The position numbers were made by a program, and so were the translations under genes. A stretch of 40,710 nt of DNA, from NCBI RefSeq assembly GCF_001194135.2, contig NC_068998.1:36945093-36985802 (forward strand), written 5' to 3'. This document shows positions 1-27,386 of this stretch, one piece after another (within the stretch, counting starts at the first letter, position 1; each line of letters begins with the position of its first letter). The notes beneath the pieces were generated by a model. It saw only the letters and a program-made list of their open reading frames with translations. It searched no databases and had not been told where the DNA came from. Source of the DNA: Octopus bimaculoides (Eukaryota).

Positions 1-4
1 TGTG

Positions 5-320: not shown

Positions 321-352
<32 letters not shown>

Positions 353-459
353 AGTGAGTATGTATAGATATACCTTCTGACACAGATATATGAATAAGCA
401 TACATACATAACTATATATTTATATATAATATATATAATGTATAATATATGTATATAAT

Positions 460-670
460 TTATTCTTTTACTTGTTTCGGTCATTTGACTGCGGCCATGC
501 TGAAGCACCACCTTCAGTCGAACGAATCGACCCCAGGACATATTCTTTCTAAGCCTAGGACTTGTTCTATCGTCACTTTTGCCGAACCGCTAGATTACAG
601 GAACGAAAACTCACCAACATCGGTTGTCAAGCGATGGTGGGGTTCAAACAGAGACACACAGAGACACACA
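460..670 (-). mobile_element. SINE family A, 3' half
   Basis: cttgtttcggtcatttgactgcggccatgc...ggttgtcaagcgatggtggggttcaaacagagacacac is the reverse complement of the 3' half of the full copy at 6659-7115. Confidence 0.85.
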
Positions 671-1242
671 AGCTTCCACTCTCTCAATGCATTGTAACTG
701 TAATGTCATTTCTTCAAACTTAGAGTTTGTCACTGTTTCATTAACATTATCTGTCGTTTACGTTCACATTAACATATTTCATTGCTGTTAGTTGTCTCCC
801 TTATGTTTAACTCTCACCATTTTAACAGTAATTTTATTTCAGTTGAAGATTCTTTGTTACATTGTATGTATCAGTAGTGACACTTAACTGCTGCGTTTCA
901 TATTGATGGCGACTCTTTCGTTTACTTACAAATTCTATCAATATTGAGTGACGTTTCTAATTTGAATGCAGAGCACAAAAAAAAAGACTATAATTAAGAA
1001 ATGAATTGTATATTTTCACAAAATATTTAATATTTTCTATATTTCAATATGTATTTTAGGAAGTTAAAAAGGTTAATTTGAATACGCAATTTAAAAAATA
1101 AATTTGCGAAAATCAAACAGGAATTGACATTTTAAAATTAAAGTATAATATGAGCTAAAAAATTTGTTGCCTAATTATGAAGAAACGAATGCGAGAGAAA
1201 TTCTACGCCGAATGCGTCACAGCTACAAAAATATCATCGTCA

Positions 1243-1405
1243 GAGCTACGTAGTAAGAAGTTTACTTCCCAGCTTCCCAAATACATGATTGCAGATTCAG
1301 CCATACTGCATGACACTTTAGTAAGTGTCTTCTGCTATTGCTTCGGGCTACCAAAGCCTAGGATTTAGTAGACGGAAAATGAAAGAAGGCCGTGGTGAAT
1401 ATATA
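1243..1405 (+). mobile_element. SINE family A, 5' half (tRNA-like head)
   Basis: gtagtaagaagtttacttccc...gtaagtgtcttctgctat...ggatttagtagacggaaaatgaaagaagg aligns by eye to 6659-6820 and ends in (TA)n. Confidence 0.75.
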
Positions 1406-1599
1406 TATATATATATATATATAATCGAAACAGATGTCAGGGATTATGTCTATTTTTGTAATTAATAAATATAATTATTAATTGATTATCTCTATTTTCT
1501 ATTTTTTCTTATATTTATACATACATATATATGAAGAGAGAGGGAGTTAGAGAAAGAGAGCAAGAGAGAGAGATACACGACGAATTCTCTCAGTTTTAT

Positions 1600-1979
1600 G
1601 TTTTCCTCTGTGGATCAGTTACAGGACGCCCAGACCCTGAATCAACTTCAAGACTCTCCGTTCCTCTCCTAAATTCAGCTGCCCCCTTTTGCGTCGTCCT
1701 CTAATGTAGCAACCATGTTAGCATTAATGCCCTTTTCGGACTAAACCCTCTTAATTTCTCCAGGTATTTGATAGCACCACGATACCCACTTTTGTCCATT
1801 TTCAAGAGAAATCGGTACTAGGTACTTCTGAACTCTACTGTGAATCCTCAGATGCCAGTTTACCTGGAAAGAAACAATAAAGTTATTGATAAGAAGACTT
1901 GAAATCAATGTATGCAAGATTTTACAGTTGTAGCATCGCTCCTTCATAGTCAGCCTATGAACTTCCCAGCCCTTCCCTA
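1600..1979 (-). mobile_element. Mariner transposon 5' fragment (TIR region plus transposase N-terminus, decayed)
   Basis: Minus strand from ATG at 1799 reads MDKSGYRGAIKYLEK..GINANMVATLEDDA..AEFRRGTESLEVDSGSGRPVT with frameshifts, matching the mariner HTH N-terminus (..AEFxRGRESLEDDxRSGRP). A TA-flanked TIR-like start gggctgggaagttcataggctgac lies near 1979. It is truncated just before a (GA)n tract. Confidence 0.8.
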
Positions 1980-3269
1980 TATCTTAGTGTTCCTTGAAGG
2001 ATCGAGCAAATTGTTCCCCGTACTTAATGTGGCACTTTTTCTGTCAGCGTTTTATGTGAGACCGCCAATTTAGAGAGGAGTGAACTCGTTTCCAAANNNN
2101 NNNNNNNNNNNNNNNNNNNNNNNNNNNNNNNNNNNNNNNNNNNNNNNNNNNNNNNNNNNNNNNNNNNNNNNNNNNNNNNNNNNNNNNNNNNNNNNNNNNN
2201 NNNNNNNNNNNNNNNNNNNNNNNNNNNNNNNNNNNNNNNNNNNNNNNNNNNNNNNNNNNNNNNNNNNNNNNNNNNNNNNNNNNNNNNNNNNNNNNNNNNN
2301 NNNNNNNNNNNNNNNNNNNNNNNNNNNNNNNNNNNNNNNNNNNNNNNNNNNNNNNNNNNNNNNNNNNNNNNNNNNNNNNNNNNNNNNNNNNNNNNNNNNN
2401 NNNNNNNNNNNNNNNNNNNNNNNNNNNNNNNNNNNNNNNNNNNNNNNNNNNNNNNNNNNNNNNNNNNNNNNNNNNNNNNNNNNNNNNNNNNNNNNNNNNN
2501 NNNNNNNNNNNNNNNNNNNNNNNNNNNNNNNNNNNNNNNNNNNNNNNNNNNNNNNNNNNNNNNNNNNNNNNNNNNNNNNNNNNNNNNNNNNNNNNNNNNN
2601 NNNNNNNNNNNNNNNNNNNNNNNNNNNNNNNNNNNNNNNNNNNNNNNNNNNNNNNNNNNNNNNNNNNNNNNNNNNNNNNNNNNNNNNNNNNNNNNNNNNN
2701 NNNNNNNNNNNNNNNNNNNNNNNNNNNNNNNNNNNNNNNNNNNTGTGTATGTGTGTGTGTATGCATGCGTGCTTCTCGTTGTGATCATGAAGTAAAGTAT
2801 TATTTTCATACTCTATAAATTTACTTTCTTCGATTTATGATAGTGGTTTTGTATGGTGAAAAGGTTAGTTTGTAACAACCTGGATCGTCTTTCAATTCAC
2901 TATTGGTTTAGATGTCATCAGCTGCTGACTGAAGAACGAGAAAATAAACATTGGTGGCAATGGCACTCAGAATCTATAAAACAAAACTAAATAATATAAC
3001 AGAAATAGATTGAAGTGGCTAACGCTGTTTCGACCATCACATCGTTATTGATGAAATATGATTCATTAGTTTTCACCCCTGCGAACGAGCTGTCCTTTCT
3101 GTATGTAACTTTTAACATTAAATCTATCATATAATCACTCATGAGATCTTGACAACTATAGAATGATCAGAAATTCAATACTCTAGTGATACTCCATGTT
3201 GATTTGTCGAGCGACTTGAAAGATCCACTACATAATCTTTTATTGTTTTTCCTGTTTGTTATTTCTTTT

Positions 3270-3455
3270 CGATTTTTCACTTGCTTCAGCCATTTGATTG
3301 GAAGGGTTTATTTGACCACTGTACTGCTAGCTTTTAAGTCCCGTACTTATTCTATAGGTTTCTTTTGGGGAACTACTAAGTTACAAGCACGTAAACAAAC
3401 CAACAGCGGGAGCCAAAAGGTGGTGGAGACAAACACGAAGAAACGCACACGGTCA
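3270..3455 (-). mobile_element. SINE family A, 3' half, degraded
   Basis: cttgcttcagccatttga...gtacttattctatagg...ggtggtggagacaaacac resembles 460-670 and is followed by a (CA)n/(TA)n tract. Confidence 0.7.
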
Positions 3456-3458
3456 CGC

Positions 3459-3489
<31 letters not shown>

Positions 3490-3907
3490 TGCATACACAA
3501 ACACACATATACATATACATATACATTCACACATATATACATTCATATACATTCACACTCACACACACATATACATACACAGATATACTTATATATAAAT
3601 GCACATATATATATATTTATGTATATGTATATATNNNNNNNNNNNNNNNNNNNNNNNNNNNNNNNNNNNNNNNNNNNNNNNNNNNNNNNNNNNNNNNNNN
3701 NNNNNNNNNNNNNNNNNNNNNNNNNNNNNNNNNNNNNNNNNNNNNNNNNNNNNNNNNNNNNNNNNNNNNNNNNNNNNNNNNNNNNNNNNNNNNNNNNNNN
3801 NNNNNNNNNNNNNNNNNNNNNNNNNNNNNNNNNNNNNNNNNNNNNNNNNNNNNNNNNNNNNNNNNNNNNNNNNNNNNNNNNNNNNNNNNNNNNNNNNNNT
3901 ATATATA

Positions 3908-4445
3908 CAGGCATACCTCGGATTAAGTCGTACTCGATTGTGCGTCGGTTTTCAAAAATAATATATGGAAAAATAAAAATCAAATTAAGTCAACTTTACG
4001 TCTGTCCGCCACACAAATATTGGAATCGTAAAATCACTAGAAAACCGTTAAAAGTACATAAAATGAATCCGTGAATGTTCTTAAGTGGTTTGATAATGTT
4101 GCCATCAACAAAGAACCGGAAATGGATTTGGAGGAGGAGGATTTCACAGATCTATTTGAAATAAACAAGCAGCCCCTGACGAACGAAGGTTTGATAGAGC
4201 TTCACGAGCAGCAAAATAAAAAAAAGAAAAAGAAAAAAAGACAAGAGGATGTCGGACCTGAGCCACGTCACTTTACCATTAAGAAAATACAGCAAGCATT
4301 TGCATATATCGAAAAACGTCTTTGTATGTTCGACAATATGAATCCAAATGCTCAACGCTTTTCCAAGATAATGGGGGCTTGCCTCGAAATTTTTCTCCCT
4401 ATAATGTAATCCTTGAGGAAAAGACGAAGAAGAGAGTTCAATGAA
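3908..4445 (+). mobile_element. Tigger/pogo DNA transposon, internally deleted
   Basis: TA|CAGGCATACCTCGG at 3906-3921 is a Tigger-type TIR. ORF 4071-4409 (MDLEEEDFTDLFEINKQPLTNEGLIEL..PRHFTIKKIQQAFAYIEKRLCMFDNMNPNAQRF) matches the C-terminal tail of Tigger1-like transposases. No right TIR was found. Confidence 0.75.
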
Positions 4446-4904
4446 TGAAAAGGTACATTGTAAATAAACAACGAGAGGTAATAAAAAAATACGTATACTG
4501 AGTGTACAACTGGATGGGAGACAGACACAGAACGTCCCTAATTCTTCATCGGTTATCAACTGAATGCTAATACTCAGTTTTGCACCATTAATGATAAGCC
4601 TGAGAACCTCCCATGCTGGCGGTGCCCGCAAAACCTGCAGAGAATGAAAGGTCTAGTCTAGGGTAAACAAAACAACACGGGGTGTACATACGAAAGGGAA
4701 AAATTGTAATCTGTAACGATGGACAAAGACAAAATAAATAAGAAACGAGCAAAATACATCCTCAAGGCCAAACAGACGAGAATGGTGGGTAACACTTAGA
4801 AGACATTCTAAAGGATATAGAAAACAACATCTATATATATGTGTGTGTATATATCTATATATATATGTGTATGTATGTATGTATGTATGTATGTATGCAT
4901 GTAT

Positions 4905-5060
4905 ATATGTATGACGAGGTGCCCGACGGTTTCTGTCATAAGACACTGTTGGGCCCGGAATTATAGCAATAGGCACTTGCCCAAGAAGCCACGTTGCAGG
5001 ATTGAACCTGAAACCACGTTACTGCAAAGCGAGTTTCGTAACCTCACAGCCATACCTGTG
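4905..5060 (-). mobile_element. SINE family A, 5' half, degraded
   Basis: gcacttgcccaagaagccacgttgcaggattgaacctgaaaccacg...cacagccatacc is the reverse complement of the family A head. Confidence 0.75.
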
Positions 5061-5524
5061 AAATTGAGCCAAAACAACAGAAGTTAAAAAAGAAAACAAT
5101 AAACATAAGAACAATATTGATTTCTTAAATAATTTGTAAAAACCGATATGTACGATCGTTTTACGTTCATACAATTCCCAATGAGGATTTGAGACGTAAT
5201 TAAAGTAAAATAACATTAGCTGAAGATCGAAGGCGGATCACCGTTTTTGTCCCCAGAGTGCACAGCAATCTTTTCTATAGACATTGCCATTTTAGTCCAA
5301 TATCGGTTTACTCCAATTAGACTAAAATGTCGATATTTGATGTTCTTGAACATTGTTTAGGCCTAGGTCAGTCCTGTTTCAGTAGACCTGTAACCACTAG
5401 AAGATAGTTTTTTTAGTCACGAACTACATTCTTGGAAGATTCGTCTTCTGTTTTAAGATACTGGGGTGTTATTTCATAGGGAATTTTATTGTTTTATGCA
5501 GCAGATCGAGCAACTGTGGGGCCA

Positions 5525-5859
5525 CCCTTATTCTCTCTGTCTTTCTCTCTCTCTCCCTCTCTTTCCCCCCTCTCTCTCTCCCTCTCTCTCTCCCTCCCTC
5601 TCCCCTCTCTCTCCCCTCTCTCTCCGTCTCTCTCTTTCTCTGGCTCTTACGTATTTCAACACTTTTGGAGGATATTTTGGCATAGATATGTGTGTGCGCG
5701 TATGTGTGTGTGCGTGTGTGTGTATGCGCGTGTGTATGTGCGCGAGTGCGCGTGTCTGCGAGTGTGTATGTATATGTGTGTATGTGTGTTTGTGTGTGTG
5801 TGTGTGTGTGTGCGCGTGTATCTATATACATATATACATTTACATATCTATAAATATGC

Positions 5860-5943
<84 letters not shown>
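5525..5943. repeat. (CT)n polypyrimidine tract followed by long (GT)n microsatellites
   Basis: Directly visible. Confidence 0.95.
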
Positions 5944-5947
<4 letters not shown>

Positions 5948-6658
5948 AATATTTTCGAAACGAAACTAATAAATGTCTAACTCACCTCTGAGTTCAAACT
6001 CAGGTTCATGATAGATTTAAACCTCGTATCAAAAATTGTCATCCTCTTGCTAAGTATCAGCCCGTCTCCGTATAACATTCCACATTTGGCGTGCCTTCGT
6101 TTCCAGAGCCCCATTGAAAGAGAAGTAGTCTTTTGTTTTTTTTCGTTTTGTATCTCTTCAAAATCTGTAAGTATTTCTTATGAGTGGGAAGTGAAAGATT
6201 TATGAATATTTTATTTATTTATTATAGAACGGATCTTAATATCCATCTTCAAGCATTATTGACATCTTCTCCCATCAATTTCAACGACGGCAGGGACGCC
6301 AAGTATATAGATTGCATTTCATATAAAATGAATTGTTTTGCGCTTAAATCACGTTGAAGTTTCTTCCAAGTTGACATAACGAAATACAACAATATTTACG
6401 CTCGCTATAATACATGAAATGATCACTCACACAAAAGAAATGGGTCTATTTTCAATAACTAATTTCTAAGAAAACAAAAATAATAATAATTATAAAATAA
6501 AAATAAGAAACAAACTATTTCACGACTATTTCATAGGACCTTATTTGTACGACGCTGATCTCCAGTGAGCTTGATATCATCATTTCAATCGAGACAAAAA
6601 AGTAATCGTATCTCGTGTATTTGGTGATAATCGTTGAGCCGTTTCTAAACTCTCAATA

Positions 6659-7115
6659 CGGCGTGGTTGTGTGCTAAGAAGTTTGCTTCCCAACTACATA
6701 GTTCAAGGTTCAGTCTCACTGTGTCACACTTTGGGCAAGTGTCTTCTAGTATAGTCCTGGGCCGACCAGAGCTTTGTGAGTGGATTTGGAAGTGGGAAAC
6801 TGAAAGAAACCAGTCGTACATATATGTGTGTGTGTGTGTGTGAGTGTGTGGTGTGTGTGTGCGTGCACGCGTGTTTGAGTGTGTGTGTGTGTGTGTGTGT
6901 GTTTCTGTCAGTGTTTGTTCCCCACCACCGTTTGACAACAGGTTTTGCTGTGTTTACATCCCCGTAACGTAGAAGTTCGGCATATGCGACTGGTAGAATA
7001 AGTGAAAGGCTTAAAAGAATAAGTCTAAGTCTTGGGATCGATTTGTAAAGTCCTTCAAGGAGGTTCTCTAACATGGCTGCAGTCTAATAGCTGAAACATG
7101 TTCAAAATAAAAGAT
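6659..7115 (+). mobile_element. SINE family A, full length (tRNA-derived head, central microsatellite, 3' body)
   Basis: A-box-like gtggttgtgtgctaag and B-box-like ggttcagtc in the head; internal (GT)n at 6825-6902; 3' end gctgaaacatgttcaaaataaaag. At least seven partial copies occur elsewhere in the window. Confidence 0.88.
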
Positions 7116-7443
7116 ACTTGTTTAGTTAATAACCATGCTTTGTTCAAGTTAATTAGGATATGAAGTCTCGAAATAAGTAATGAATCTGATTCGAATAAGT
7201 TGATTTGAGGATGAAGCTGCCACTCTACCGTCCTCTATTTTGTGTCACGTAGTAACTACATTTTAGAGAGTAACTCATTTCCTATTTAGCCTAGAAAACC
7301 TATTTTCGACGAACTCAATACTTTCAAATTCGTGGTGGCCTGTAAACAAAACAAAAACAAATACGCTCTATATACAAATTTGATTACTTTAAATTGCGGA
7401 TTGTCTCTTTACCTTTCTTTTTACTAAAAGTTATCATTTAGAT

Positions 7444-7733
7444 CAGTGCTACTAAAAGTGATGGTCCGCGAACCGGTGCCGGTCCACGAGCCATCAGCTG
7501 CCGGTACGCAACGAGTTTCCAGAAAAGAAAGAAACGTTATAAAATGCTTATGCAATATTGTATTATTTGTTTACAAAATAAATATTCGATAAGAAAAATT
7601 GTCAACTTTTATTATATCCATTATATATAATGTTTCCGGTATAGATTAATATTACTAAGAAATATTACCGGTCCCTGGACATTGGGAAAAAAAACCTACC
7701 GGTACGTCACATGAGGTGGTTTGAGAAGCACTG
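7444..7733. mobile_element. hAT (Charlie-like) MITE
   Basis: TIRs CAGTGCTACTAAA / TTTGAGAAGCACTG, flanked by a perfect 8-bp TSD ATTTAGAT at 7436-7443 and 7734-7741; repeated CCGGT subterminal motifs. Confidence 0.9.
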
Positions 7734-7924
7734 ATTTAGATGTCTTTTTTCTTATCAATAATGTAACGACAATGCTAGTATTAGTAACAACTATGTTAGC
7801 TTTACTAATATATTTACATTATATTACTTCATAACATACATTTCCGTTATAACATATATTCCCCTTAAAATATTATATTAATTGCAAATTATATCGACAT
7901 CTGTACTCAAATTGTATTTATTTT

Positions 7925-8050
7925 ATTAATCCCGATGGCTGAAAAACAAAGTCGACCTCGGGAGAAATTGAACTTAGAAGTAAGGATGGACGAAGAAATG
8001 CTGTAAAGCATTTTGCCTGATGCGGTAACGATTCTGCCATTTGACCACTG
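7925..8050 (-). mobile_element. SINE family B, degraded
   Basis: aaagtcgacctcgggagaaattgaacttagaa...gtaacgattctgcca resembles the family B head and body. Confidence 0.7.
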
Positions 8051-8061
8051 TGTCTTACAAT

Positions 8062-8462
8062 ACTCTTTTCTACTCTAGGCACAAAGCCCGACATTTTGGC
8101 GGAGGGTACCTGTTGATTAGATCGACCCCAGTACGCAACTGGTACCTAATTTATCGACCCCGGAAGGGTGAAAGACAAAATCGACCTCGGCGGAATTTGA
8201 ACTCAGAACATAAAAACAGACGAAATACCTATTTCGTTATTGCCCACAAGGGGCTAAACATAGAGGGAACAAACAAGAACAGACGAACGGATTAAGTCGA
8301 TTACATTGACCCCAGTGCGTAACTGGTACTTAATTTATCGACCCCGAAAGGATGAAAGGCAAAATCGACCTCGGCGGAATTTGAACTCAGAACGTAACGG
8401 CAGACGTAATACCGCTGTGCACTTCGCCCGGCGTGCTAACGTTTCTACCAGCTCACCGCCTT
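8062..8462 (-). mobile_element. SINE family B, dimeric (central domain duplicated)
   Basis: Two copies of gaccccagt..aactggtac..atttatcgacccc..gaaag.caaaatcgacctcggcggaatttgaactcagaac. The head reads ggcggtgagctggtagaaacgttagc (A-box-like) with B-box gagttcaaattcc on the minus strand. Confidence 0.9.
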
Positions 8463-9041
8463 CTTGTCTTAAATCATATTAATGCTTTACTATTATATAT
8501 ACGTACATCTTTCGCCCCTGGGTACTTTTCAGCCGTCAGTCTAATGCCATAAGGTATTTTCTGTCAGTTGAGTTCTAGATATCATAACTACCAACTCGAT
8601 CTATTGTCATATAAAGCGGCATACCTGCTACTGAAGTATGTTTATCCTCATCAGATCGTTTGTTAACACGAGTTAATCTTATATCAGTGATGTTCGTCAA
8701 CTGAAAGAGAGATGTAATGTTTTATTAATGTTCCTACAAATTCTATTCTGAAACTGAGACGTTACGTCTTTGGATTTCAAGATTCTTAAATTATTGACTG
8801 CTGCCGAGTACACACGCACGCATATATACACACAACACACACGCGCGCACACACGCATACACTAACGCAGACATGCTCACAAAACATATGCATACATATA
8901 TTTACATACATCACATACATATTATACATACATACATACATACACACACATATATGTATATGTATGTATATGTATATGCATACACATATGTGCGTATACG
9001 TATATATACACATATACAGATATGTGTGTATGTATATATAT

Positions 9042-9497
9042 CGAGTTGGATGGCGAACAAGGGTGTGGAGTGGAGTGAAAGCATTTGAAGAGGCCAGGAT
9101 GATGCAAGCAGGGCTCAAGAGACATTTAAGGAAAAAGGTGAAGACTGAGAAGATGAATGACAAGGACCTTTTTGTGTGCACAGTCTGTGACAGACCATGT
9201 CTGTCCTTGGCTGGCCTCAAATCTCANNNNNNNNNNTCTTATTATATGTCTGTGCACACGTTTGAATGTGGTGTGTGCCAGAGGGTTTGCAAATCCAATG
9301 GGGGTCTTAAAAGACATGTTAGGATCCATAATGAGCAGAACTTACTTGCAGGTATTGGTAGTGCAAATCAGAGGTGCAATCTGTGTGGGTGTTTTTTCAA
9401 AACACTGTCTGGTTTAAAAAGCCACATCAGACGCCATGAAAGGGCTAAGGTGTAGGTGCAGGAGGTGGTCAAACTCTGTTTAAGGAGTAGACAACCA

Positions 9498-9500
<3 letters not shown>
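9042..9500 (+). mobile_element. RTE LINE 3' end (5'-truncated) encoding three C2H2 zinc fingers
   Basis: WRTRVWSGVKAFEEARMMQAGLKRHLRK is the RTE post-RT motif (WR..V..G...FE..R......KR..RK). It is followed by CTVCDRPCLSLAGLKS(gap), CGVCQRVCKSNGGLKRHVRIH and CNLCGCFFKTLSGLKSHIRRH, a stop at 9455, a short 3'UTR and a (TA)n tail. Confidence 0.85.
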
Positions 9501-9540
<40 letters not shown>

Positions 9541-10868
9541 TTTATAGATATATATGTATGCCTGTGTGTGTGCGTGTGAGTGACCGTGTACGTACGTATG
9601 TATGTTTGTATGTGTGCGAGTGATTATTGCTATTGATTCAGAAGAAAGAAAATTGCGTGTCGTGACGAATATATCTCTTCCAGCCGCACAACTGAAACAT
9701 TTAATCCAATACTTTGATGTCACAGCTTCACACAATCTGTATGATAATGCTTGCTTACTTCAAAAGATTATTTTTCAAATACGGACTGGTTAAAAAGTGG
9801 TTCCTAATTTATCATCCTTTAACGATTTTATAAAAGTTTTCTCTTCAGATCAACGCAAATGAAATTTCCGACTGACGGAGTCGATAAAATGGTAGATTAC
9901 CGCCAGAAATCTCTTCGATTTGTTTACTGTCATCAATATTGCATTTGCGTTCGAGCAAGAAATCTAACTCAGGTCAATCCACTCTATAAGCTGAGAGTAA
10001 ATAATATATGATTGATAGTTACTTTCACCACTTTAAGCAATTGTAGCATTGTAAAACTACATTTTGTATTTTTCCAGAGCCTCGTTATATTTTTCGAGTG
10101 GGTATAGTTGAAAGGCGGAGATAGACTCCACCGTGCTGTGTTGATCCAGGAATTCCACATAAAAAACGAATTTTTCGAATGTGAACCTATAACAGCCATT
10201 AACTTTTAAGACAGCACCGCTTCTCATTACATCTGAATCAATGAAGAAGTTGCTTTAATTCAAGTAGAGTTGCGTAAGATTTGATCCTTTATGAATTTAT
10301 ACCTTTGTTGCAAGATCTATATGTAGACCCAATATCACTGTATCTCTGTATCGACCAGAAGTTGTTATGCAATTCCTCGCACTGTTAAAGCTTTCGACTT
10401 ATTGAATATATCAATCACCATTTTCCATTGTACACCATTACATTTTAGGTTGGAGGAAATTTGGGTGTTATTTCCAGCAAATCACATGCTCCAGCAGAGC
10501 CCTATCTTCGTTGGTTCAACGTAAACTCTGATGCTCATGCATTGTAGATCAGTCGTAGTCTTAAAGCTATGGCGCAAGACGTTTAAACATGCACGAACTA
10601 TATTTGCAATCTAGGCGTAAATGGGATTTGTAAGAGATTTGGCTGCTATTTCCAACAGTATGAGATAGGATTGAATTTTCGTGCCTGATCATCTACCCTT
10701 CACATGTCTAATGATAAGAAAATTTGTTTTTAAGAAGTGTGTTTGTTATGGCTGCAATAGGCCTGTTTTTTATGATCTGGAAACATTTCGATTTCAGATG
10801 CAGAATTCTATAAACACTAAAACATCCGATTATGTTGTGCATTTATTAATTTTGAATATATATATAGT

Positions 10869-11070
10869 AAGGCGGCTAGCTGGCAAAATCGTTAGCATGC
10901 TGGACAAAATGTTTAGCGACATTTCACACGTCTGTCTTTACTTTCTGAGTATAAATTTCTCCGAAGTCGACTTTAGCTTTCGTCATTTCAGAGTCGATAA
11001 AATAAGTACCAGTTAAACACTGGTGTCGATGTAATCAACTATTCCCCCAGCCCAACAGTGGAAATGATTA
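10869..11070 (+). mobile_element. SINE family B
   Basis: aaggcggctagctggcaaaatcgttagc...gaagtcgactttagctttc..gtcgataaaataagtaccagtt. Confidence 0.85.
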
Positions 11071-11326: not shown

Positions 11327-11961
11327 CATACATACATACATGCAAAAGCTTACAAATATAATCTGTAAGCGGAAAAGTAAAATTATCCAAAACTTTTCTA
11401 AGATTTAAAATGTAACATTGATTCAGTTACCTACATTCCAACGGCAGAGCTTTGTATATTTGTTAGAAACCAGTTCCTTCTTCACAGGAAGAATTTAAAT
11501 AATTAAAAGCAAACAATATATATATATATATATANNNNNNNNNNNNNNNNNNNNNNNNNNNNNNNNNNNNNNNNNNNNNNNNNNNNNNNNNNNNNNNNNN
11601 NNNNNNNNNNNNNNNNNNNNNNNNNNNNNNNNNNNNNNNNNNNNNNNNNNNNNNNNNNNNNNNNNNNNNNNNNNNNNNNNGCATGCATATACAAGGATGT
11701 TGCTTAGGCTTACCGATACTAATAAACTGTTTTTAGAACCCAAAATACCTATGCTTCAGAATAAATCGTTAGTTGAGTGCAGAGTGTAATACGAAAATAA
11801 ATGATTGACAATGGAAGAAATTAATTAATCAACTTCATTAGCTTACAGTTCTTTCTGTTATAAAAAGCAGTGTATTTAGAGCATCTTCTTGGATCCTTTT
11901 TAGATATATAAATATATATAAACAAATTACACCCAGCCTTACAAAGCGGAAAAAAATTGTC

Positions 11962-12033: not shown

Positions 12034-14082
12034 CGCTTACGAATTATTGTGCAATGTTAGATGCTATAAAGCTGAATGCACAACTATGCGTGTATGTGTG
12101 TGTGGGGGGATATATGTGTGTGTGTGCTTTGACCATAGACGATGTACGGCAATAATGACACAATTGGAACTACGAATCCTAAGCTAATTGGTTGCTATCT
12201 TATCTATTCGCCATTCAAATCTTCTTCAACGGGAAAAGGAGAAAATGATATAATTTGACCATGTTAACACTTTACAATGTGAAATTTGAATGTAACAAGA
12301 ATATTCTCATGAGAAAAAGTTGAAGCTAAATTTCCGTTCTTCAAACAAAGATAGTAGTAATAGACATCTATCAAACAGTGGGAAATGTGTTGAATGTTTC
12401 AATTCCGATACTTTCTGGTAATTTTTCTTCTCATTAAAAAGAATTAAAACTATCATACGCTGAGACAGATGACTACTTGTAATCAGTGGATTCTAATCAA
12501 CTAATTTCAACTAATTAATTAATTAATTAATTAATTCCTTCAACCTTCAGAGTTAATTAGCTTAACAGGTTATGGTTATTAATTAAGTTTAAAATTATTA
12601 GGTTTATTGTAGTAATAAGAGACATGCAAAAAGGTTTGGATTCTCATATAATGTCCATGCATTTCAATAATGGGTGTCCTTAGCGGTGCACATTCTATGG
12701 CAACTATTTGAGCCATGTTCTCGTTCTAAAGGTAACCAATTATTTGCAGTTGCTTGTATCATTTCTCTACTGGCCTTGATAGTCTTGTACTACGTCATAG
12801 TAACCGCCCTTCTTAGACACACTAGGCCATAAAAGGAAAGCAATAATGTTGAACAAAATTTAGTTCAGTCCAGGGGTTTTGAAACTGCTCATTCACTTCG
12901 ACGAATTTGACACTGTGAATAGCGCCGCATCAGGGTTTAAAAAGGCAATCATCGAATACCGACAAGAACGACGTAGTTACAGCGCCATTCTGAATTACAT
13001 TACTGTTCTACCTTCTCTATAAATATGCATGCACCTACAAGACATGTTAACGAGATAACACTATCAGTCAGAACTGAGTTTAAAAGATAAAATACAAAAT
13101 TTATGCAGATGTGATTTTAATGGAGAATGTACTGGAGATAGTATGTGGTGTTCAGATAACTTGAGGATGTCTCACCATGTTTGTTGGTTAATGGAACTGT
13201 TATACTTCTCATTGTAGAAACAGCTTTGCAAAATGACTGATCTATACATTCTGACTTTAGTTAGAATTTAGATGATCAAAGTTGTTCGCTAGATATATAT
13301 GCATACATACATACACACATACATATATGCATACATACATGCATAAGTACATATAAAACTATAAAATCAAGAGGTATGAGAGGTGATTGTATATCTATTT
13401 AACCGCGTGGCATCCTGAGGTTACAGGCGTTTCGAAACCTTCTTCACGTAGTACAAAACTCGTTAGTTAGCAGCACAATTCCCTTAGACCACAACTTGTG
13501 CTACTCATTGACATATATACTTACATTCACACACACACACACACACACACATATACATACATACATACATACATACACACACACACACGTATATGCGCAG
13601 AACGTCCTTATGCAATTTCGAATATATTTGTATCAATTGTACGGTATTATTTCAAGAAAAATTAGCTGCTATTTATAGCAGGTTGTATGACTTTATAAAG
13701 CTACTTTAGTTGTCTCTTAATAATAGTAACGTAAGAAGTTGGAGTCAGATCATTTTAGTCATACTGGGTATGACTTACAATTTTTATTATTATAGATTTT
13801 GAATCCAACATGAGGACACGGCTAGCAGTTGTGTGATCAAAGTCATTACGAACAAGACAATTGCCATTTATGTTCCTATAATACATAGTTCAGATCCCCT
13901 GTATGCAATGAATGATAACAAGGAGTGTGATAAGAAGGAGAATTTCTAGAAACTTACACCTTTCGTTACCAACAAAAAGAGTTTCTCGCTGTCTGTGTTT
14001 TACACGGCGCTTAAAGGTACTGGGAAATATGTGGTATGTATTAGCTATGTAAATAATATGCAATATAAAATGACCCAAATAT

Positions 14083-14152
14083 CTAATGTTTTCTTCTAAT
14101 TTTCATTACAGGTAAGTTCAGTTTATTATCCTGCTATTCTAATAAGGTAAGT
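14083..14152 (+). promoter_or_regulatory. Candidate recursive splice site (CAG|GTAAGT) with 35-nt RS-exon and downstream donor
   Basis: CTAAT branch-like motifs at 14083 and 14096, a T-rich tract, CAG at 14109-14111 directly followed by GTAAGT at 14112-14117, and a second AAG|GTAAGT with GTAAGT at 14147-14152. Confidence 0.55.
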
Positions 14153-14366
14153 GATATAACTATATTTCTAAAATAAACACACATGCATATATGCATCTGC
14201 ATGTATATATGCACTCGCAAACATCTATACTTATATGCAAATGCGTATTTGCATTACTTATATATATATATATATATGTATATATAAATATATATTTACG
14301 TATGTATGTATGTATTCCTGTATGCATGTGTATATATATGACCGAGATATATGTATATATACATAA

Positions 14367-15547: not shown

Positions 15548-18088
15548 NNNNNNNNNNNNNNNNNNNNNNNNNNNNNNNNNNNNNNNNNNNNNNNNNNNNN
15601 NNNNNNNNNNNNNNNNNNNNNNNNNNNNNNNNNNNNNNNNNNNNNNNNNNNNNNNNNNNNNNNNNNNNNNNNNNNNNNNNNNNNNNNNNNNNNNNNNNNN
15701 NNNNNNNNNNNNNNNNNNNNNNNNNNNNNNNNNNNNNNNNNNNNNNNNNNNNNNNNNNNNNNNNNNNNNNNNNNNNNNNNNNNNNNNNNNNNNNNNNNNN
15801 NNNNNNNNNNNNNNNNNNNNNNNNNNNNNNNNNNNNNNNNNNNNNNNNNNNNNNNNNNNNNNNNNNNNNNNNNNNNNNNNNNNNNNNNNNNNNNNNNNNN
15901 NNNNNNNNNNNNNNNNNNNNNNNNNNATATATATATATATATACACCTATATATGCATATAGTTATGTACATGTGTATGTATGTATATATGTATGCATGT
16001 ATGTATGGATGGATGGATGGATGGATGGATGGATGGATCAGTGATTAGTACTGAGACACCCCTCAGCTTTTGTTAATGCCGCTCCCTATGGAAAGATCAC
16101 TCTAATGGAAAACCAGATATGCAGGAAATGGCGTTGAATAATTTGGGCATATGTTGCCTGACCTTCCGAAAATGGTGCCCCTACATTCCTGAGCTTGTGA
16201 CACATATTGGCACTGGATATCTTGCTCTGACTTTTCTGTGGATAATGTCAATACGAAGGAAAGGAACTGTGATGTGTTGTTCAAGCCTTAGGCTTAAAAT
16301 CTTAAGTTGAGCAACCGCCGGCGAGGTGACTTTCCGATTCGCGGTCGAGTAGGAAGGCGCCGCAGCGAGAAGAGAAGCCGCCTGCACGCACTCGGCTGAA
16401 GACGACCACGGCTGCAATAATGTTATTTTTCAAGGGCGATAGTCAGTGTTGGTCTTCCTTAGTCACAAGTGGATAGCTATCATTAGTGACTGTATAAACG
16501 TCAATATCTACTGAATGTGACTCGTTATATAACATATACGATATTTTACTTATTAGTTTAGGTTCCCCTGAATGTGCAAGTAGCAATCTACAGCCACTCC
16601 TGCTCCATAATTTTGTAGAGTACAAATTAATTATTCTAAAACAAGAATGTTGATTACGAAGTTTCGGCCAGCTAAGCAGTACGACAATAGCCTAGATGAC
16701 TGCAACTTTGAAGTCACTGCTTACAACATTTTTTGAGAATAATGAATAGATATCAAGAANNNNNNNNNNNNNNNNNNNNNNNNNNNNNNNNNNNNNNNNN
16801 NNNNNNNNNNNNNNNNNNNNNNNNNNNNNNNNNNNNNNNNNNNNNNNNNNNNNNNNNNNNNNNNNNNNNNNNNNNNNNNNNNNNNNNNNNNNNNNNNNNN
16901 NNNNNNNNNNNNNNNNNNNNNNNNNNNNNNNNNNNNNNNNNNNNNNNNNNNNNNNNNNNNNNNNNNNNNNNNNNNNNNNNNNNNNNNNNNNNNNNNNNNN
17001 NNNNNNNNNNNNNNNNNNNNNNNNNNNNNNNNNNNNNNNNNNNNNNNNNNNNNNNNNNNNNNNNNNNNNNNNNNNNNNNNNNNNNNNNNNNNNNNNNNNN
17101 NNNNNNNNNNNNNNNNNNNNNNNNNNNNNNNNNNNNNNNNNNNNNNNNNNNNNNNNNNNNNNNNNNNNNNNNNNNNNNNNNNNNNNNNNNNNNNNNNNNN
17201 NNNNNNNNNNNNNNNNNNNNNNNNNNNNNNNNNNNNNNNNNNNNNNNNNNNNNNNNNNNNNNNNNNNNNNNNNNNNNNNNNNNNNNNNNNNNNNNNNNNN
17301 NNNNNNNNNNNNNNNNNNNNNNNNNNNNNNNNNNNNNNNNNNNNNNNNNNNNNNNNNNNNNNNNNNNNNNNNNNNNNNNNNNNNNNNNNNNNNNNNNNNN
17401 NNNNNNNNNNNNNNNNNNNNNNNNNNNNNNNNNNNNNNNNNNNNNNNNNNNNNNNNNNNNNNNNNNNNNNNNNNNNNNNNNNNNNNNNNNNNNNNNNNNN
17501 NNNNNNNNNNNNNNNNNNNNNNNNNNNNNNNNNNNNNNNNNNNNNNNNNNNNNNNNNNNNNNNNNNNNNNNNNNNNNNNNNNNNNNNNNNNNNNNNNNNN
17601 NNNNNNNNNNNNNNNNNNNNNNNNNNNNNNNNNNNNNNNNNNNNNNNNNNNNNNNNNNNNNNNNNNNNNNNNNNNNNNNNNNNNNNNNNNNNNNNNNNNN
17701 NNNNNTATATATGCACGTTTATATATATATATAAATATATATATATGCATGTGAATAGGTATAAAGATATATATTCATATATATGCACGTTTATATATAT
17801 ATATAAATATATGATAATAGAGAATCAGTTTTATGTGCATAAAGATTGGCAAAGAGATAAATAGGTAAATAAATATATTAGATTAGATCGTTAAGAAATA
17901 AAATTTGTATGCAAGCCATATAAACAAACATATATATCAGAAACTTCGCACACACTGAGATAGGCACCTACGTACATATTTATATATACATACATATATA
18001 TTCACGCACATGCCATTACACAAATATGAACATTTATTTATCTATCTATCTATCTATTTATCTAAGTATCTATATATATATATATCAA

Positions 18089-18637: not shown

Positions 18638-18838
18638 CTTTTCTACTCTAAGCACAAGGCTCGAAATTTTGGGGGATTAGATCGAGCCCAGTACGCAACT
18701 AGTAATTAGTTTATCGACCCCAAGAGGATGAAAGGCAAAGTTGACCCCGGCGGAATTTGAACTCACAGCATAAAGCCAGACGAAATACCGATAGGCATTT
18801 CGCCCGGCGTGCTAACGTTTCTGCCAGCTCGCCGCTTT
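18638..18838 (-). mobile_element. SINE family B with 18-bp target site duplication
   Basis: Family B body flanked by a perfect direct repeat AACGTTACCGACAATAAT at 18620-18637 and 18839-18856. Confidence 0.92.
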
Positions 18839-19940: not shown

Positions 19941-20305
19941 TTGACTTTGTAGTGGAAATGAATATTTGGACCATATCGATGGGTTGAAGGATTCGTCTTC
20001 TATTAGTGAATGAAGTCAATGACTTCTACACGGAGACATTTCTCATTAAGTTGGAGATTGTAATTGCAAGTTAAGCTAACGAAGCATTTCACACGACTTA
20101 CCTAAGAATGGGACCGATATTGAAGTTTGCGCTTGCGGTCAACTATTAGGTTGTGATGATGGAAATCTACAATCTGGTTGATTATTCGATAACAACGAAA
20201 ATCTCATTTCCGTGTGGTGTATGAGAAGCAAGTTAGATTGGTAAAGAACGTATATCAGTAAAGTCAGCACCTTAGTGATACGGCCCTGATATTTTTTCTA
20301 TAGTA

Positions 20306-21565
20306 CAGAGTATACAAAACGTCTCTCTACAGTAAGTATTTTATTGCAAAATAAACATTTGTAAGATGGTATAAGACTACAAAAGAACATATTAGACTTT
20401 ACAAGACTTTAAAAACTTTATAAGAGGTGTTGAACGTGTCGTCCTGCATCGACTCTTCTACACATGTTTTGAAATACATCTTGGAGAGTCTGACGCGGTA
20501 TGGACTGTTTGAAGGTTAAGATTGCGTTTTTTAGCTCATTATTGGTTTTCGGGCGATTCGTATACACTGATCCTTTACTTGCTCCACAGAAAAAAATCTG
20601 ACGGTGTTAAATCAGGTGATCTTAGTGGTCAAAGTCCCTTCGAAACAATCCGTTCACCGAAAAACTCTTGAAGTAGCGCCATGGTGATGCGCGAAGTATG
20701 TGCTGTAGCTCCATCTTGCTGAAAGTATGCATTATTAATTTCCCTTTCAGTGAGTTGGCCTACAAATGGATAGACAATATTTGAGCAATATCTCTCGGTG
20801 TTGATGGTGTCTTCAAAAAATGTCGGTCCCACAATTCGCTTTCTCGAAATTGCTATCCATACCCCAACTTTTCGGGATGCAGAGGTTGTTCATGCATCGC
20901 GTGTGGATTCTTAGTGCTCCATAACCTTGTGTTTTGCGAATTTATGTGTCCCGACAGATGAAACCAAGTCTCATCGGTGTAAAGACACCCATCCAACACT
21001 CGTATGCCTTTTTCGGCAACAAAGTTTTGGAACCAATGACAATAATGAAGCCTTTTAGCATGATTTGTAGTCTTCAATTCTTTAATGGCCAGCACGTTGT
21101 ATAGAAAGAAAGTTAATTTATTTTTACTGCCGTGAGAACACGTCCTTAGCTGAATTCCGTTTCCTGTGACAATTTGATTAAGGACTTTGATGAGCTTGCC
21201 AAAAGTTAATCAGAAATATTGGAAAGTGTTTCATCTGAAAGAATTGCAGGCCTACCGCTTGTTGCTGCGTCTTCCACTGAACCTGTTTCTAAATTTTCTT
21301 ATCAAATCCCGCACAGTAACACGATGTGGAACAACAGTATTTGGAAAAGTTTCGCTGAACTTCTGTTTCACAGTATCTGTGTATTTGTTTCCAGCTCAAA
21401 ACACCCATTCAACTAAAGACGTAAGTTCTTCAATGGTTAGCATGTCGACACGCTAAAGGGTACACAATGACTGAGGGACAATGGCTGTCCACGTAGTAAT
21501 AGCCAAGTTGCGCATGCGCCGGATGGAAAAAAAAATCACTGCGGAGAGACTTTTTGAACACCCTG
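20306..21565 (-). mobile_element. Full-length decayed Tc1/mariner-superfamily transposon (rosa/DD41D-like group)
   Basis: 28-bp TIRs cagagtatacaaaacgtctctctacagt and (reverse complement) cagggtgttcaaaaagtctctccgcagt, 22/28 identical, TA on both sides; 1260 bp. Confidence 0.92.
20418..21443 (-). pseudogene. DDD transposase pseudogene
   Basis: MLTIEE..ETGSVEDAATSGRP..YTDETWFHLSGHINSQNTRLWSTKNPH..YFQQDGATAHT..VSKGL*PLRSPDLTPSDFFLWS..GRHVQHLL*; several stops and frameshifts. Confidence 0.9.
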
Positions 21566-23032: not shown

Positions 23033-23216
23033 TTTCTACTATAGGCACAAGGCCTAATATTTTGGGGAGTGGACTAGTAGACTACATCGACCACAGTGTT
23101 TCGGTGGTACTGGCAAAGTCGACCTTGGCAGTATTGGAATTCAGAACGTAGCGACGGTCGAAGTGCCGCTAAGCATTATTGCCGGCGTGCTAACGATTCT
23201 GCCAGCTCACCACCTT
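23033..23216 (-). mobile_element. SINE family B, degraded
   Basis: ttttctactataggcacaaggcc...aaagtcgaccttggcag...gccggcgtgctaacgattctgccagctcaccacctt. Confidence 0.85.
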
Positions 23217-25789: not shown

Positions 25790-26140
25790 AGTCTTAAAAA
25801 GTGATCTAATTTTGGGCCAACCACTTGTCTCCGAATTTTGTTAATTACTAAATCGTGTGGGATTTTTTTATTGTGATGTTCTATAAGGTAATTAAGAGTG
25901 AAGACAAACAGCATAGGAAACACGCCATTCTTATTCTCATCCAATTTGTAGTAAATTAACTGGAGAGAATATTTCTTTTTCCGTCCATATATCCTCATTA
26001 AGTAGTGCTTGATAAAATTTATATGGAATTGGCTGTAATAGGGCATACCTCTGCTCGTTCCATACCCTGCCACTCTCGCTACTGTTATCACTTGAAGGGG
26101 AAAAACTGCTTACATTTCCTTGCGAAAGAATAAACCTCAC
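25790..26140 (-). mobile_element. Decayed CR1/L2-like LINE reverse transcriptase fragment
   Basis: Minus frames GRVWNEQRYALLQ and KLDENK..KKIPHDLVINKIRRQVVGPKL resemble RT segments ERxVNEQLY..L and FDKVPHDLLIxKL..YGVG. Confidence 0.5.
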
Positions 26141-26444
26141 TGGAGCGATCTTTATGATCGATTTGGTTGATCTACTCGAACTGCCCTAGGGGAATTATCA
26201 GATGTTAAACTAACTCCGCAAGAAAAGAATGCTCGCACAGTGATTGCAGAATGGTTTCATTACACTCCATAGTGCGCGGAGAGGACTAACTGCTTGCACT
26301 AATTTCTACTAAAGCGACTTTGCCAGGCTAAGCTCAGCATGACTTCTGGAAGTTCTCCATAATCCTGACATCGAAAGCTTTGTGAAAGAAACTGCTCAGT
26401 TGATTAATGTCCAGAACGTCATGACAAATGCCTATTTAAAGTAG
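26132..26444 (+). pseudogene. Possible decayed death-domain-like coding relic
   Basis: One frame reads KPHWSDLYDRFG*STRTALGELSDVKLTPQEKNARTVIAEWFHYTP*CAERTNCLH*FLLKRLCQAKLSM, then a shifted frame reads LLEVLHNPDIESFVKE. The W..L..xG / W / LL..L spacing resembles the death fold. Three in-frame stops. Confidence 0.3.
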
Positions 26445-27041
26445 AGAGTTAAGGTAGATGAGGAGGTTGAGAGAAAGAGAAAGTGAGAGGGAGGTGGTGG
26501 GTGAGAGACGGATGAAACCAAATAAATTTATTCATTTAGTCTGGTTTTCTGTAATGTCTGCCAATTCATAAGATAGAGGAATATGTAAACATATACAGAG
26601 TAAATAAGTAAATGTTAGACAGCGAGAGAAAGAGAAAAGGATAAAGAAAGAGAGAGAGAGAGAAATTGAGACAAACAGTGAAAGATAGAGTTAAGGGGAG
26701 AGAGAGGGGAGAAAGAGATATAAATAGGCAGTCAACAGCCAAACTTATAAGGTAAACGGGTGAAAGCAACCAAAGATAAATTGATAGACAGACAGACAAA
26801 CAGACAAAAAAAATAGACACAAAGATAGACGGATAGAAAAACAAAGAAATAAGACAAGCGTACCGTGAGAGGGAGAGGGACAGACAGACAGAGACAGAAG
26901 GAAAGAGAGAAAGTCAGCAGTTCAAACCAGTATTTAAGAACGCAGACACACGTTGACAGGTAGGAACAGACTGAAGGATAGCAGACGTACTGGGCTTTAT
27001 AAGATACGTAAGCGTTTTCATTTAGTTGATTTAGTGGATTT

Positions 27042-27152
27042 ATGAGGAGTAGCTTGACGCTTCGGAGAAAAATCCTTCGTCGGAGAAAGATGCACAGTTA
27101 CGAGAGTGAGAAAGTAAGGAGAAAAAGGAGACCGAAGTGGAGGAGAAAAAAG
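27042..27152 (+). CDS. Candidate first coding exon, 37 aa basic peptide (unknown gene)
   Basis: ATG at 27042, open frame MRSSLTLRRKILRRRKMHSYESEKVRRKRRPKWRRKK, ending at AAG|GTAAGT (27153); non-repetitive context. No homology recognised. Confidence 0.25.
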
Positions 27153-27386
27153 GTAAGTTAACAAGTGTTTATGGAGAGGGATAACATTGAGGAAGATGAG
27201 AAAAACGAAAATTCAAAATATTTAAAATTTTAGTGACAACACAATGGTTGCTCTTGGCTAAACCGGACTTTCATTGTATATATTTACCATAGAAACATGT
27301 ATGGCTGATTTAGCGAAATGTTAATGTATTTATTAAAAATTAATATAAACAGCTAGGCGCAATATAAGACTGATAAAATTTTTCAC

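What the first reader, a model, noticed from the sequence alone, without database searches (positions are those of the whole stretch)
14083..14152. Complete recursive-splicing cassette: 3'ss/5'ss junction plus a 35-nt RS-exon
Seen: branch-like CTAAT twice, a T-rich tract, and CAG immediately followed by consensus GTAAGT; 35 nt later a second AAG|GTAAGT. The surrounding sequence is non-repetitive. Known: recursive (ratchet) sites in long Drosophila and vertebrate introns have this YAG|GTAAGT form and are defined by a short downstream cryptic RS-exon. Inference: the window lies in a very long intron of a + strand gene that is removed stepwise. The 35-nt exon would shift frame if included. I know of no description of recursive splicing in cephalopods.
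Basis: partly seen in the sequence, partly recalled or inferred. Interest (0 to 1): 0.72.

Follow-up and report, generated by a model that had tools for sequence, protein, structure and literature searches.

The report
Candidate recursive splice site, usage unproven
The sequence really does contain a textbook "splice-in, then splice-out-again" signal followed by a 35-base mini-exon. It is too good to be a routine coincidence, but nothing available here can show that it lies in a gene or is ever used.

Summary
On the + strand there is CTAAT (14083-87), a T-rich tract, CAG|GTAAGT (junction 14111|14112) and, 35 nt later, AAG|GTAAGT (14146|14147).

- **Bare core:** YAG|GTAAGT alone is not unusual (2 found, 0.5 expected).
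- **Whole arrangement:** it is rare. It is the best of 184 AG|GT junctions in the window. Core plus pyrimidine tract is expected 0.003-0.008 times per window. With a second perfect donor 20-110 nt downstream, the expectation falls to about 3e-5 or less.
- **Not a repeat:** it is not a tandem repeat, a dispersed repeat or a local duplication.
- **Fly-type features:** it has the TT at -5/-6 of fly ratchet points, a 65-nt AG-free zone and an out-of-frame short exon.

The interpretation could not be tested. No gene, exon, strand of transcription, RNA evidence or orthologous sequence could be obtained. The searchable collections showed no cephalopod data, and even the taxon is unconfirmed. The downstream donor is as strong as the ratchet donor, so the 35-nt exon might be included as a poison exon rather than always skipped.

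My estimates are about 0.4 for a used recursive-type cassette, about 0.4 for an unused pseudo-exon and the rest for other splice-related readings. If real, it is a new member of a known kind.

The parts
14083..14087 (+). CTAAT, candidate branch point (branch A at 14086, 25 nt upstream of the 3' splice junction)
   Evidence: Sequence read. The distance is my count. Matches the yUnAy/CTRAY branch consensus (established knowledge).
14096..14100 (+). Second CTAAT (A at 14099, only 12 nt from the junction; probably too close to serve as a branch point)
   Evidence: The distance argument is inference from general spliceosome geometry.
14045..14109 (+). AG-exclusion zone: 65 nt without any AG upstream of the acceptor AG
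   Evidence: the last upstream AG ends at 14044. Only 3.9% of AGs in the window have a zone of at least 65 nt.
14089..14108 (+). Polypyrimidine tract, 16/20 Y (TTTTCTTCTAATTTTCATTA), with TT at -6/-5
   Evidence: 1.2% of AG sites reach 16/20. TT at -5/-6 is found in 99.5% of fly ratchet points (10.1101/006163).
14109..14117 (+). Ratchet-point core CAG|GTAAGT: acceptor and donor juxtaposed, junction 14111|14112
   Evidence: Top-scoring of 184 AG|GT junctions on both strands.
14112..14146 (+). 35-nt putative RS-exon (GTAAGTTCAGTTTATTATCCTGCTATTCTAATAAG). Not a multiple of 3; a stop (TAA) in one of three frames
   Evidence: frame analysis by reading the sequence. [quoted passage not shown]
14144..14152 (+). 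Downstream donor AAG|GTAAGT that would define the RS-exon; same GTAAGT hexamer as the ratchet donor
   Evidence: 5'ss score identical to the first, 4.6 bits.
14172..14177 (+). AATAAA hexamer 26 nt downstream of the second donor. A possible cryptic poly(A) signal, relevant only to a rival reading
   Evidence: Such hexamers are frequent here (A[AT]TAAA: 72 on +, 55 on -), so this may be coincidence.

Best explanation
The most likely single mechanism is a recursive-splicing cassette on the + strand, at about 40%.

**Proposed steps.**
1. During transcription of a long intron, the segment 14112-14146 is recognised by exon definition. U2AF/U2 bind the tract, the branch point and CAG at 14083-14111. 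U1 binds AAG|GTAAGT at 14147.
2. The upstream exon is spliced to 14112. This removes the first part of the intron and places GTAAGT (14112-14117) directly after that exon, re-creating a donor.
3. Either this regenerated donor is used, so the 35 nt leave with the rest of the intron and the mRNA keeps no trace. Or the equally strong donor at 14147 is used, so the 35-nt frame-shifting exon is kept and the mRNA is probably destroyed (poison exon).

**Shown:** the signals, their exact juxtaposition, their quality relative to the rest of the window and their statistical rarity.

**Inferred:** everything about use, namely transcription on the + strand, an upstream exon, both splicing steps and the skip-or-include outcome.
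For: - Exact motif and spacing.
- Best AG|GT junction of 184 in the window by a wide margin.
- Acceptor quality in the top 0.7% of AGs and donor in the top 1% of GTs.
- 65-nt AG-free zone and a branch consensus at -25.
- TT at -5/-6, as in 196 of 197 fly ratchet points.
- A short out-of-frame exon closed by a strong donor, as required by the exon-definition model.
- Composite expected at about 3e-5 or less per window under Markov nulls.
- Not explained by repeats or by a duplication.
- The RNA around it is less structured than shuffled controls, so the signals would be accessible (z=+1.96).
- In published counts, ratchet-point motifs occur at about 0.07-0.12 per 100 kb on the antisense strand of large introns. 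On the sense strand they are 4-22 times more frequent in insects and 8 times more in sea urchin (PMC2773006). In non-vertebrate animals a good motif in a sense intron is therefore usually real.
Against: - No gene, exon or transcription evidence for either strand.
- No strand bias of poly(A) or donor motifs; if anything there are more A[AT]TAAA on + (72 against 55).
- No conservation data.
- Vertebrate large introns show almost no sense/antisense enrichment of such motifs (ratios 0.9-1.5). If this organism behaves like a vertebrate, most such motifs are unused.
- The pyrimidine tract is interrupted by A's, less 'prominent' than the fly tracts.
- The downstream donor is not weaker than the ratchet donor, unlike most cryptic fly RS-exons.
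- 35 nt is short for exon definition.
- A second core, TAG|GTAAGT, sits on the opposite strand at 20096-20104, which shows that cores do arise by chance here.
- The site was picked because it looked good.
Confidence: 0.4

Rival explanations
1. Unused pseudo-exon: a coincidence of good-looking splice signals in AT-rich, T-tract-rich non-coding DNA. The DNA is either intergenic, antisense to a gene, or intronic but ignored or repressed by the spliceosome. The sequence has no function.
For: - The bare core occurs at the chance rate, and a second core lies on the other strand (20096-20104).
- AGGTAAGT is about 5-fold over-represented in this window for unknown reasons. One copy lies inside a SINE-like repeat at 38083-38090, so nulls based on composition may understate chance.
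- Roughly 0.4-2 perfect composites are expected by chance in a 2-3 Gb genome, and a scan that flags the best-looking sites will find them.
- No gene evidence at all.
- Vertebrate-type genomes carry such motifs without enrichment.
Against: - The per-window probability of the full composite is at most about 3e-5.
- Several independent acceptor features coincide: tract, TT at -5/-6, branch consensus at -25 and a 65-nt AG-free zone.
- No duplication or repeat accounts for the two donors.
Confidence: 0.4
2. An ordinary short exon or alternative-donor arrangement of a + strand transcript, for example a 35-nt cassette, UTR, lncRNA or poison exon at 14112-14146. The GTAAGT start would be incidental and is not re-spliced. 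Alternatively an exon ends at 14111 and has a second donor 35 nt downstream.
For: - The acceptor, the 35-nt body and the perfect donor form a complete exon unit.
- Two of the three frames are open across the 35 nt (sequence read).
- Mammals may carry thousands of expressed exons that begin with a donor-like sequence (PMC8605326).
Against: - All three frames carry stops just upstream of 14111, so no long coding exon ends there.
- An exon that starts with a perfect GTAAGT would be expected to re-splice unless actively repressed. This reading therefore shades into the main one.
- No transcript evidence.
Confidence: 0.12
3. A U1 snRNP landing pad. Two perfect donor motifs 35 nt apart recruit U1 to suppress premature cleavage and polyadenylation at the AATAAA 26 nt downstream (14172-14177), or to control a cryptic terminal exon that starts at 14112.
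For: Two perfect U1 sites lie immediately upstream of AATAAA. That U1 suppresses nearby poly(A) sites is established knowledge (telescripting).
Against: A[AT]TAAA occurs about every 560 nt per strand in this window, so one within 60 nt is about a 10% coincidence. The reading does not explain the strong acceptor directly abutting the first donor. No 3'-end data are available.
Confidence: 0.05

Closest known systems
Drosophila intronic ratchet points with cryptic RS-exons (Ubx, kuz, Bx; 197 to more than 500 sites)
   Same: - (Y)n-N-CAG|GTAAGT core and TT at -5/-6.
- A short downstream exon closed by a donor.
- Exon length not a multiple of three.
- Non-repetitive setting.
   Different: - In flies the sites lie in known introns of 11-133 kb, are ultraconserved and are backed by junction, lariat and saw-tooth data. 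None of that is available here.
- Fly tracts are more uniformly pyrimidine.
- In most fly cases the ratchet donor is stronger than the RS-exon donor. Here the two are equal.
- 35 nt is shorter than the typical ~50 nt.
Vertebrate recursive sites and expressed RS-exons (Sibley 2015; Blazquez 2018, PMC6224609)
   Same: An RS-exon that begins with a donor motif and competes with a strong downstream donor. Inclusion would introduce a frame shift or premature stop, giving a 'binary switch' or poison exon.
   Different: The vertebrate cases are defined by RNA data in long brain-expressed genes, and skipping or inclusion depends on the exon junction complex. No host gene is known here. Vertebrate genomes show little motif enrichment.
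Computationally predicted RP-sites in sea urchin, bee, beetle and mosquito large introns (Shepard et al. 2009, PMC2773006)
   Same: A motif-only prediction in a non-model invertebrate. The consensus (y)nncag|gtaagt is identical.
   Different: Their evidence is a genome-wide sense/antisense excess of 4-22 fold. This is a single site with unknown orientation relative to any gene.
Intronic pseudo-exons (decoy splice-site pairs)
   Same: A good acceptor and donor at exon-like spacing with no evidence of use.
   Different: Decoys rarely combine a perfect donor abutting the acceptor with a second perfect donor. The expectation here is at most about 3e-5 per 36 kb.

Membership tests
Intronic recursive splice site (ratchet point) with cryptic RS-exon, Drosophila type | Juxtaposed acceptor and donor: (Y)n N YAG|GTAAGT | tested here: met
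   CAG|GTAAGT at 14109-14117, with a perfect 6/6 donor hexamer. Top of 184 AG|GT junctions.
Intronic recursive splice site (ratchet point) with cryptic RS-exon, Drosophila type | Prominent pyrimidine tract with TT at -5/-6 (99.5% of fly sites) | tested here: met
   TT at 14106-14107 and 16/20 pyrimidines. The acceptor score is in the top 0.7% of 3777 AGs. The tract is interrupted by A's, so it is weaker than typical fly tracts.
Intronic recursive splice site (ratchet point) with cryptic RS-exon, Drosophila type | Usable branch point and AG-free zone upstream of the acceptor | tested here: met
   CTAAT with its A at 14086 (-25). No AG in 14045-14109. Sequence-level only; no lariat data.
Intronic recursive splice site (ratchet point) with cryptic RS-exon, Drosophila type | Downstream donor delimiting a short RS-exon (~50 nt, generally out of frame) | tested here: met
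   AAG|GTAAGT 35 nt downstream, and 35 is not a multiple of 3. The chance of such an 8-mer 20-110 nt downstream is at most 0.004.
Intronic recursive splice site (ratchet point) with cryptic RS-exon, Drosophila type | Ratchet donor stronger than the RS-exon donor, so that the RS-exon is always skipped | tested here: inconclusive
   Both donors are GTAAGT with equal scores. The ratchet donor's -3 to -1 positions would come from an unknown upstream exon. The downstream donor already has the optimal AAG.
Intronic recursive splice site (ratchet point) with cryptic RS-exon, Drosophila type | Located inside a long intron (more than about 10 kb), on the sense strand | not testable with these tools
   No annotation or cephalopod proteome was reachable. 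Pfam over 526 ORFs found only transposon-type domains. No strand asymmetry. The negative results are void because their positive control failed.
Intronic recursive splice site (ratchet point) with cryptic RS-exon, Drosophila type | Splicing intermediates: exon-to-ratchet junction reads, saw-tooth coverage, recursive lariats | not testable with these tools
   No RNA data are accessible.
Intronic recursive splice site (ratchet point) with cryptic RS-exon, Drosophila type | Strong conservation of the acceptor|donor motif against poorly conserved flanks | not testable with these tools
   No related eukaryotic genomes are in the collections. An exact 27-mer scan of metagenome contigs found nothing.
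Vertebrate-type RS-exon / poison exon | Exon begins with a donor motif, has a competing downstream donor, and inclusion disrupts the reading frame | tested here: met
   35 nt, with TAA in frame 2. Inclusion, NMD sensitivity and EJC dependence were not testable.
U1-dependent suppression of a cryptic poly(A) site | Strong donor motif(s) shortly upstream of a poly(A) hexamer with downstream U/GU-rich sequence | tested here: inconclusive
   AATAAA at 14172-14177, but such hexamers are frequent enough for about a 10% coincidence. No 3'-end data.

The most novel reading that the evidence does not exclude
This is a working ratchet point with an RS-exon in a cephalopod. It would be the first recursive splice site outside insects and vertebrates. 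It would imply that stepwise removal of giant introns is an ancestral bilaterian solution still used in the very long genes of octopus. With two equal donors, it might also act as a regulated on/off (poison-exon) switch.
Probability: 0.35. Interest if true: 0.55.

Novelty: new member of a known kind. Interest (0 to 1): 0.3.

Why it matters
Recursive splicing has been shown experimentally in flies and vertebrates. It has been inferred from motif excess in other insects and sea urchin (PMC2773006). No paper in the searchable library links it to cephalopods.

Cephalopod genomes are large and rich in long neuronal genes (my own knowledge). How their giant introns are removed accurately is therefore a fair question. 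One validated site would extend the mechanism to Lophotrochozoa.

A single motif proves nothing, however. The useful outcome of this finding is a concrete, cheap test: sense against antisense motif counts in long introns, plus junction reads at 14111|14112. As it stands, this is a well-formed candidate and not a discovery.

Tried and rejected
1. **Host gene by exact look-up.** Ten window ORFs, five of them flanking the site, were looked up exactly. None is in the collection.
2. **Host gene by concatenated queries.** All longer non-repeat ORFs were joined into two 4.7-4.9 kaa queries, and both returned nothing. I reject these as evidence. The transposase-like ORF included finds six relatives when searched alone, so long queries lose sensitivity.
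3. **Taxon.** The relatives of the transposase-like ORF are unnamed metagenome proteins at 46-68% identity. 'Octopus' could not be confirmed.
4. **Pfam over all 526 ORFs of at least 30 aa on both strands,** using alignments as containers.
   - The only significant hits are C2H2 zinc fingers (9237-9452, +) and a DUF4817 helix-turn-helix (21255-21395, -).
   - A MyTH4 hit at E=0.0013 is at noise level after 526 tests and was not pursued.
5. **RNA genes.** Rfam and tRNA scans found nothing.
6. **Local duplication as the source of the two donors.** Rejected: alignment score 16, shuffle p=0.35.
7. **Membership of a dispersed or tandem repeat.** Rejected within the window.
8. **Inferring the transcribed strand** from poly(A)-hexamer or donor-motif asymmetry. 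No signal.
9. **Orthologues by exact 27-mer** in metagenome contigs. None.
10. **RNA structure that would hide or present the sites.** None; the region is less structured than shuffled controls.
11. **Other AGGTAAGT sites** at 27151 and 35493 (+), 20096 and 38083 (-) were inspected as possible real exon ends. Nothing convincing was found.

Full report
**1. Observation.**
The + strand reads ...tatCTAATgttttcttCTAATtttcattaCAG|GTAAGTtcagtttattatcctgctattctaatAAG|GTAAGTgat... The junctions lie at 14111|14112 and 14146|14147, so the interval 14112-14146 is 35 nt.

The site lies in an uninterrupted 3.9-kb contig between N-gaps at 11535-11680 and 15548-15926. Within that contig it sits in a roughly 590-nt unique island between microsatellites.

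**2. Is it more than chance?**
The bare 9-mer is not. YAGGTAAGT occurs twice on the two strands against 0.50 expected, and 10 of 100 shuffles reach two. The other copy is TAG|GTAAGT on the minus strand at 20096-20104.

The acceptor side, however, is of high quality.
- 16 of the 20 bases upstream are pyrimidines.
- The last upstream AG ends at 14044, which leaves a 65-nt AG-free zone.
- Of 1753 YAG sites in the window, only 20 have such a tract and only 7 also have an AG-free zone of at least 40 nt.

I scored all 184 AG|GT junctions with a generic acceptor-plus-donor matrix. The matrix values are approximate and recalled from memory. Site 14111 scores 10.5 bits and the runner-up 6.3.

I then simulated 180 Mb under each of two Markov models trained on the window.

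| Model | 'Core + tract' sites per window | Chance of a second AGGTAAGT 20-110 nt downstream |
|---|---|---|
| Order 3 | 0.0030 | 0 of 593 |
| Order 5 | 0.0077 | 0.0038 |

The full composite is therefore expected at about 3e-5 per window at most. That is of the order of one chance instance in a 2-3 Gb genome.

Two cautions apply. The definition is post hoc. AGGTAAGT is itself enriched in this window (6 against 1.12 expected; no shuffle of 100 reaches 6), and one copy lies in a SINE-like repeat. Conditioning on four + strand copies, a pair within 35 nt has p of about 0.01 (my arithmetic).

**3. Trivial origins excluded.**
- There is no dispersed copy of the 13.6-14.2 kb region elsewhere in the window. 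The only similarities are microsatellites.
- No tandem repeat covers the site.
- The two halves share nothing beyond the 8-mer (local alignment score 16; p=0.35 by shuffling).
- The RNA is, if anything, unusually unstructured (z=+1.96).

**4. Surroundings and gene context.**
The window has about 34% GC, carries 13 N-gaps and is full of microsatellites. It also carries transposon debris:
- a broken transposase-like ORF set on the minus strand at about 20.4-21.4 kb, with a DUF4817 helix-turn-helix;
- a C2H2 zinc-finger ORF at 9237-9452;
- at least seven copies of a roughly 160-nt SINE-like repeat.

No Rfam family and no tRNA was found. Pfam scans of all 526 ORFs of at least 30 aa on both strands found no other significant domain.

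Attempts to find an annotated host protein failed for technical reasons.
- Exact look-ups found none of ten window ORFs.
- Two long concatenated searches returned nothing but missed hits that a single ORF recovers. They are therefore not evidence of absence.
- The hits are unnamed metagenome proteins. The collections showed no cephalopod proteome, and I could not confirm the taxon.

Strand-asymmetry indicators are flat. A[AT]TAAA occurs 72 times on + and 55 on -, and GTRAGT 22 against 21. Whether position 14111 is intronic, and on which strand, remains unknown.

**5. Comparison with what defines recursive sites.**
Fly ratchet points are (Y)nNCAG|GTAAGT and carry TT at -5/-6 in 196 of 197 cases. 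They sit in introns of 11-133 kb, are conserved, and were proven by junction reads, saw-tooth coverage and lariats (10.1101/006163).

They are recognised through a short cryptic RS-exon. That exon is about 50 nt, generally out of frame and poorly conserved, and it is closed by a downstream donor. The stronger of the two donors usually wins (PMC8605326; PMC6110457).

The present site meets every sequence criterion, including TT at 14106-14107, with one exception. The two donors are equally perfect, and the downstream one already has the optimal AAG. Skipping is therefore not guaranteed, and inclusion would shift the frame.

This resembles the vertebrate 'binary switch' or poison RS-exon picture (PMC5126111; PMC6224609). 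The context, RNA and conservation criteria are untestable here.

**6. How likely is it to be real?**
Shepard et al. (PMC2773006) counted ratchet-point motifs in large introns. On the antisense strand they found about 0.07-0.12 per 100 kb in all animals, which is the chance level. The table gives the sense-strand excess over that level.

| Group | Sense-strand excess |
|---|---|
| Fly | 22-fold |
| Beetle | 8-fold |
| Sea urchin | 8-fold |
| Bee | 4-fold |
| Vertebrates | 0.9-1.5-fold |

No mollusc was analysed. Suppose this genome behaves like the invertebrates and 10-20% of strand-positions are sense long-intron. A generic motif of unknown context would then be real about one time in three. 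If the genome is vertebrate-like, it would almost never be real.

The exceptional quality of this site and the matching downstream donor raise the odds a few-fold. The equal donor strengths, the interrupted tract and the selection effect lower them.

I settle on these estimates:
- about 0.4 for a used recursive-type cassette;
- about 0.4 for an unused pseudo-exon;
- about 0.12 for an ordinary short exon or alternative-donor arrangement;
- about 0.05 for a U1/poly(A)-control element, given AATAAA at 14172-14177.

These numbers are judgement, not computation.

**7. Verdict.**
The interpretation cannot be decided with the tools at hand. If real, this is a new member of a known kind and the first for cephalopods, since the library holds no paper linking the two. 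The decisive tests are simple and are listed separately. Interest is modest (0.3): this is a good candidate, not a result.

Noticed in passing
window 8065-8229, 8293-8462, 10869-11040(-), 18675-18835, 23112-23216, 30358-30506, 37923-38087(-): At least seven copies of a roughly 100-170-nt dispersed SINE-like repeat at 75-88% identity, two of them adjacent at about 8.1-8.5 kb. ARAGORN finds no tRNA and Rfam finds no family in them.
   Followed up: partly
window 20421-21395 (-): Degenerate transposase-like element, which I read from memory as Tc1/mariner-like. Its ORFs are split across frames, and it carries a DUF4817 helix-turn-helix at 21255-21395. The nearest relatives are unnamed metagenome proteins at 46-68% identity, and Pfam finds no DDE domain.
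   Followed up: partly
window 9100-9452 (+): ORF with several C2H2 zinc fingers (Pfam E=1e-10), interrupted by the 10-N gap at 9227-9236 and embedded in microsatellite sequence. It could be transposon-derived or a zinc-finger gene fragment.
   Followed up: partly
window 20096-20104 (-): A second ratchet-like core, TAG|GTAAGT, on the opposite strand, with a poorer pyrimidine tract (acceptor score -1.1 bits). It is a useful reminder that the bare core arises by chance.
   Followed up: yes
window 14110, 14145, 27151, 35493 (+); 20096, 38083 (-): The 8-mer AGGTAAGT occurs 6 times against 1.12 expected (0 of 100 shuffles reach 6). One copy is inside a SINE-like repeat and one is in a purine-rich low-complexity stretch. 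The reason for the excess is unexplained.
   Followed up: partly
window 26000-27200: A strongly purine-skewed stretch on the + strand (GC skew +0.23, AT skew +0.27) made of GA-rich low-complexity sequence.
   Followed up: no
window 32725-33290 (+): ORFs that look to me like the C-terminal end of a LINE reverse-transcriptase ORF (a recollection of typical sequences). Pfam gave no hit, so this is unconfirmed.
   Followed up: partly
window 4062-4406 (+): A 115-aa ORF with an acidic and lysine-rich middle that reminded me of the C-terminus of a pogo/Tigger-type transposase. The only match is a sub-threshold DUF4023 hit (E=0.005).
   Followed up: partly
window 1-10528 (one ORF, not located): One ORF gave a weak Pfam MyTH4 match (E=0.0013). 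That is noise level after 526 ORFs tested. If real, it would point to a myosin-type gene exon.
   Followed up: no
tool behaviour: Concatenating many ORFs into one query of up to 5000 aa for the search for homologous proteins lost hits that the single ORF recovers. Negative results from such queries should not be trusted.
   Followed up: yes
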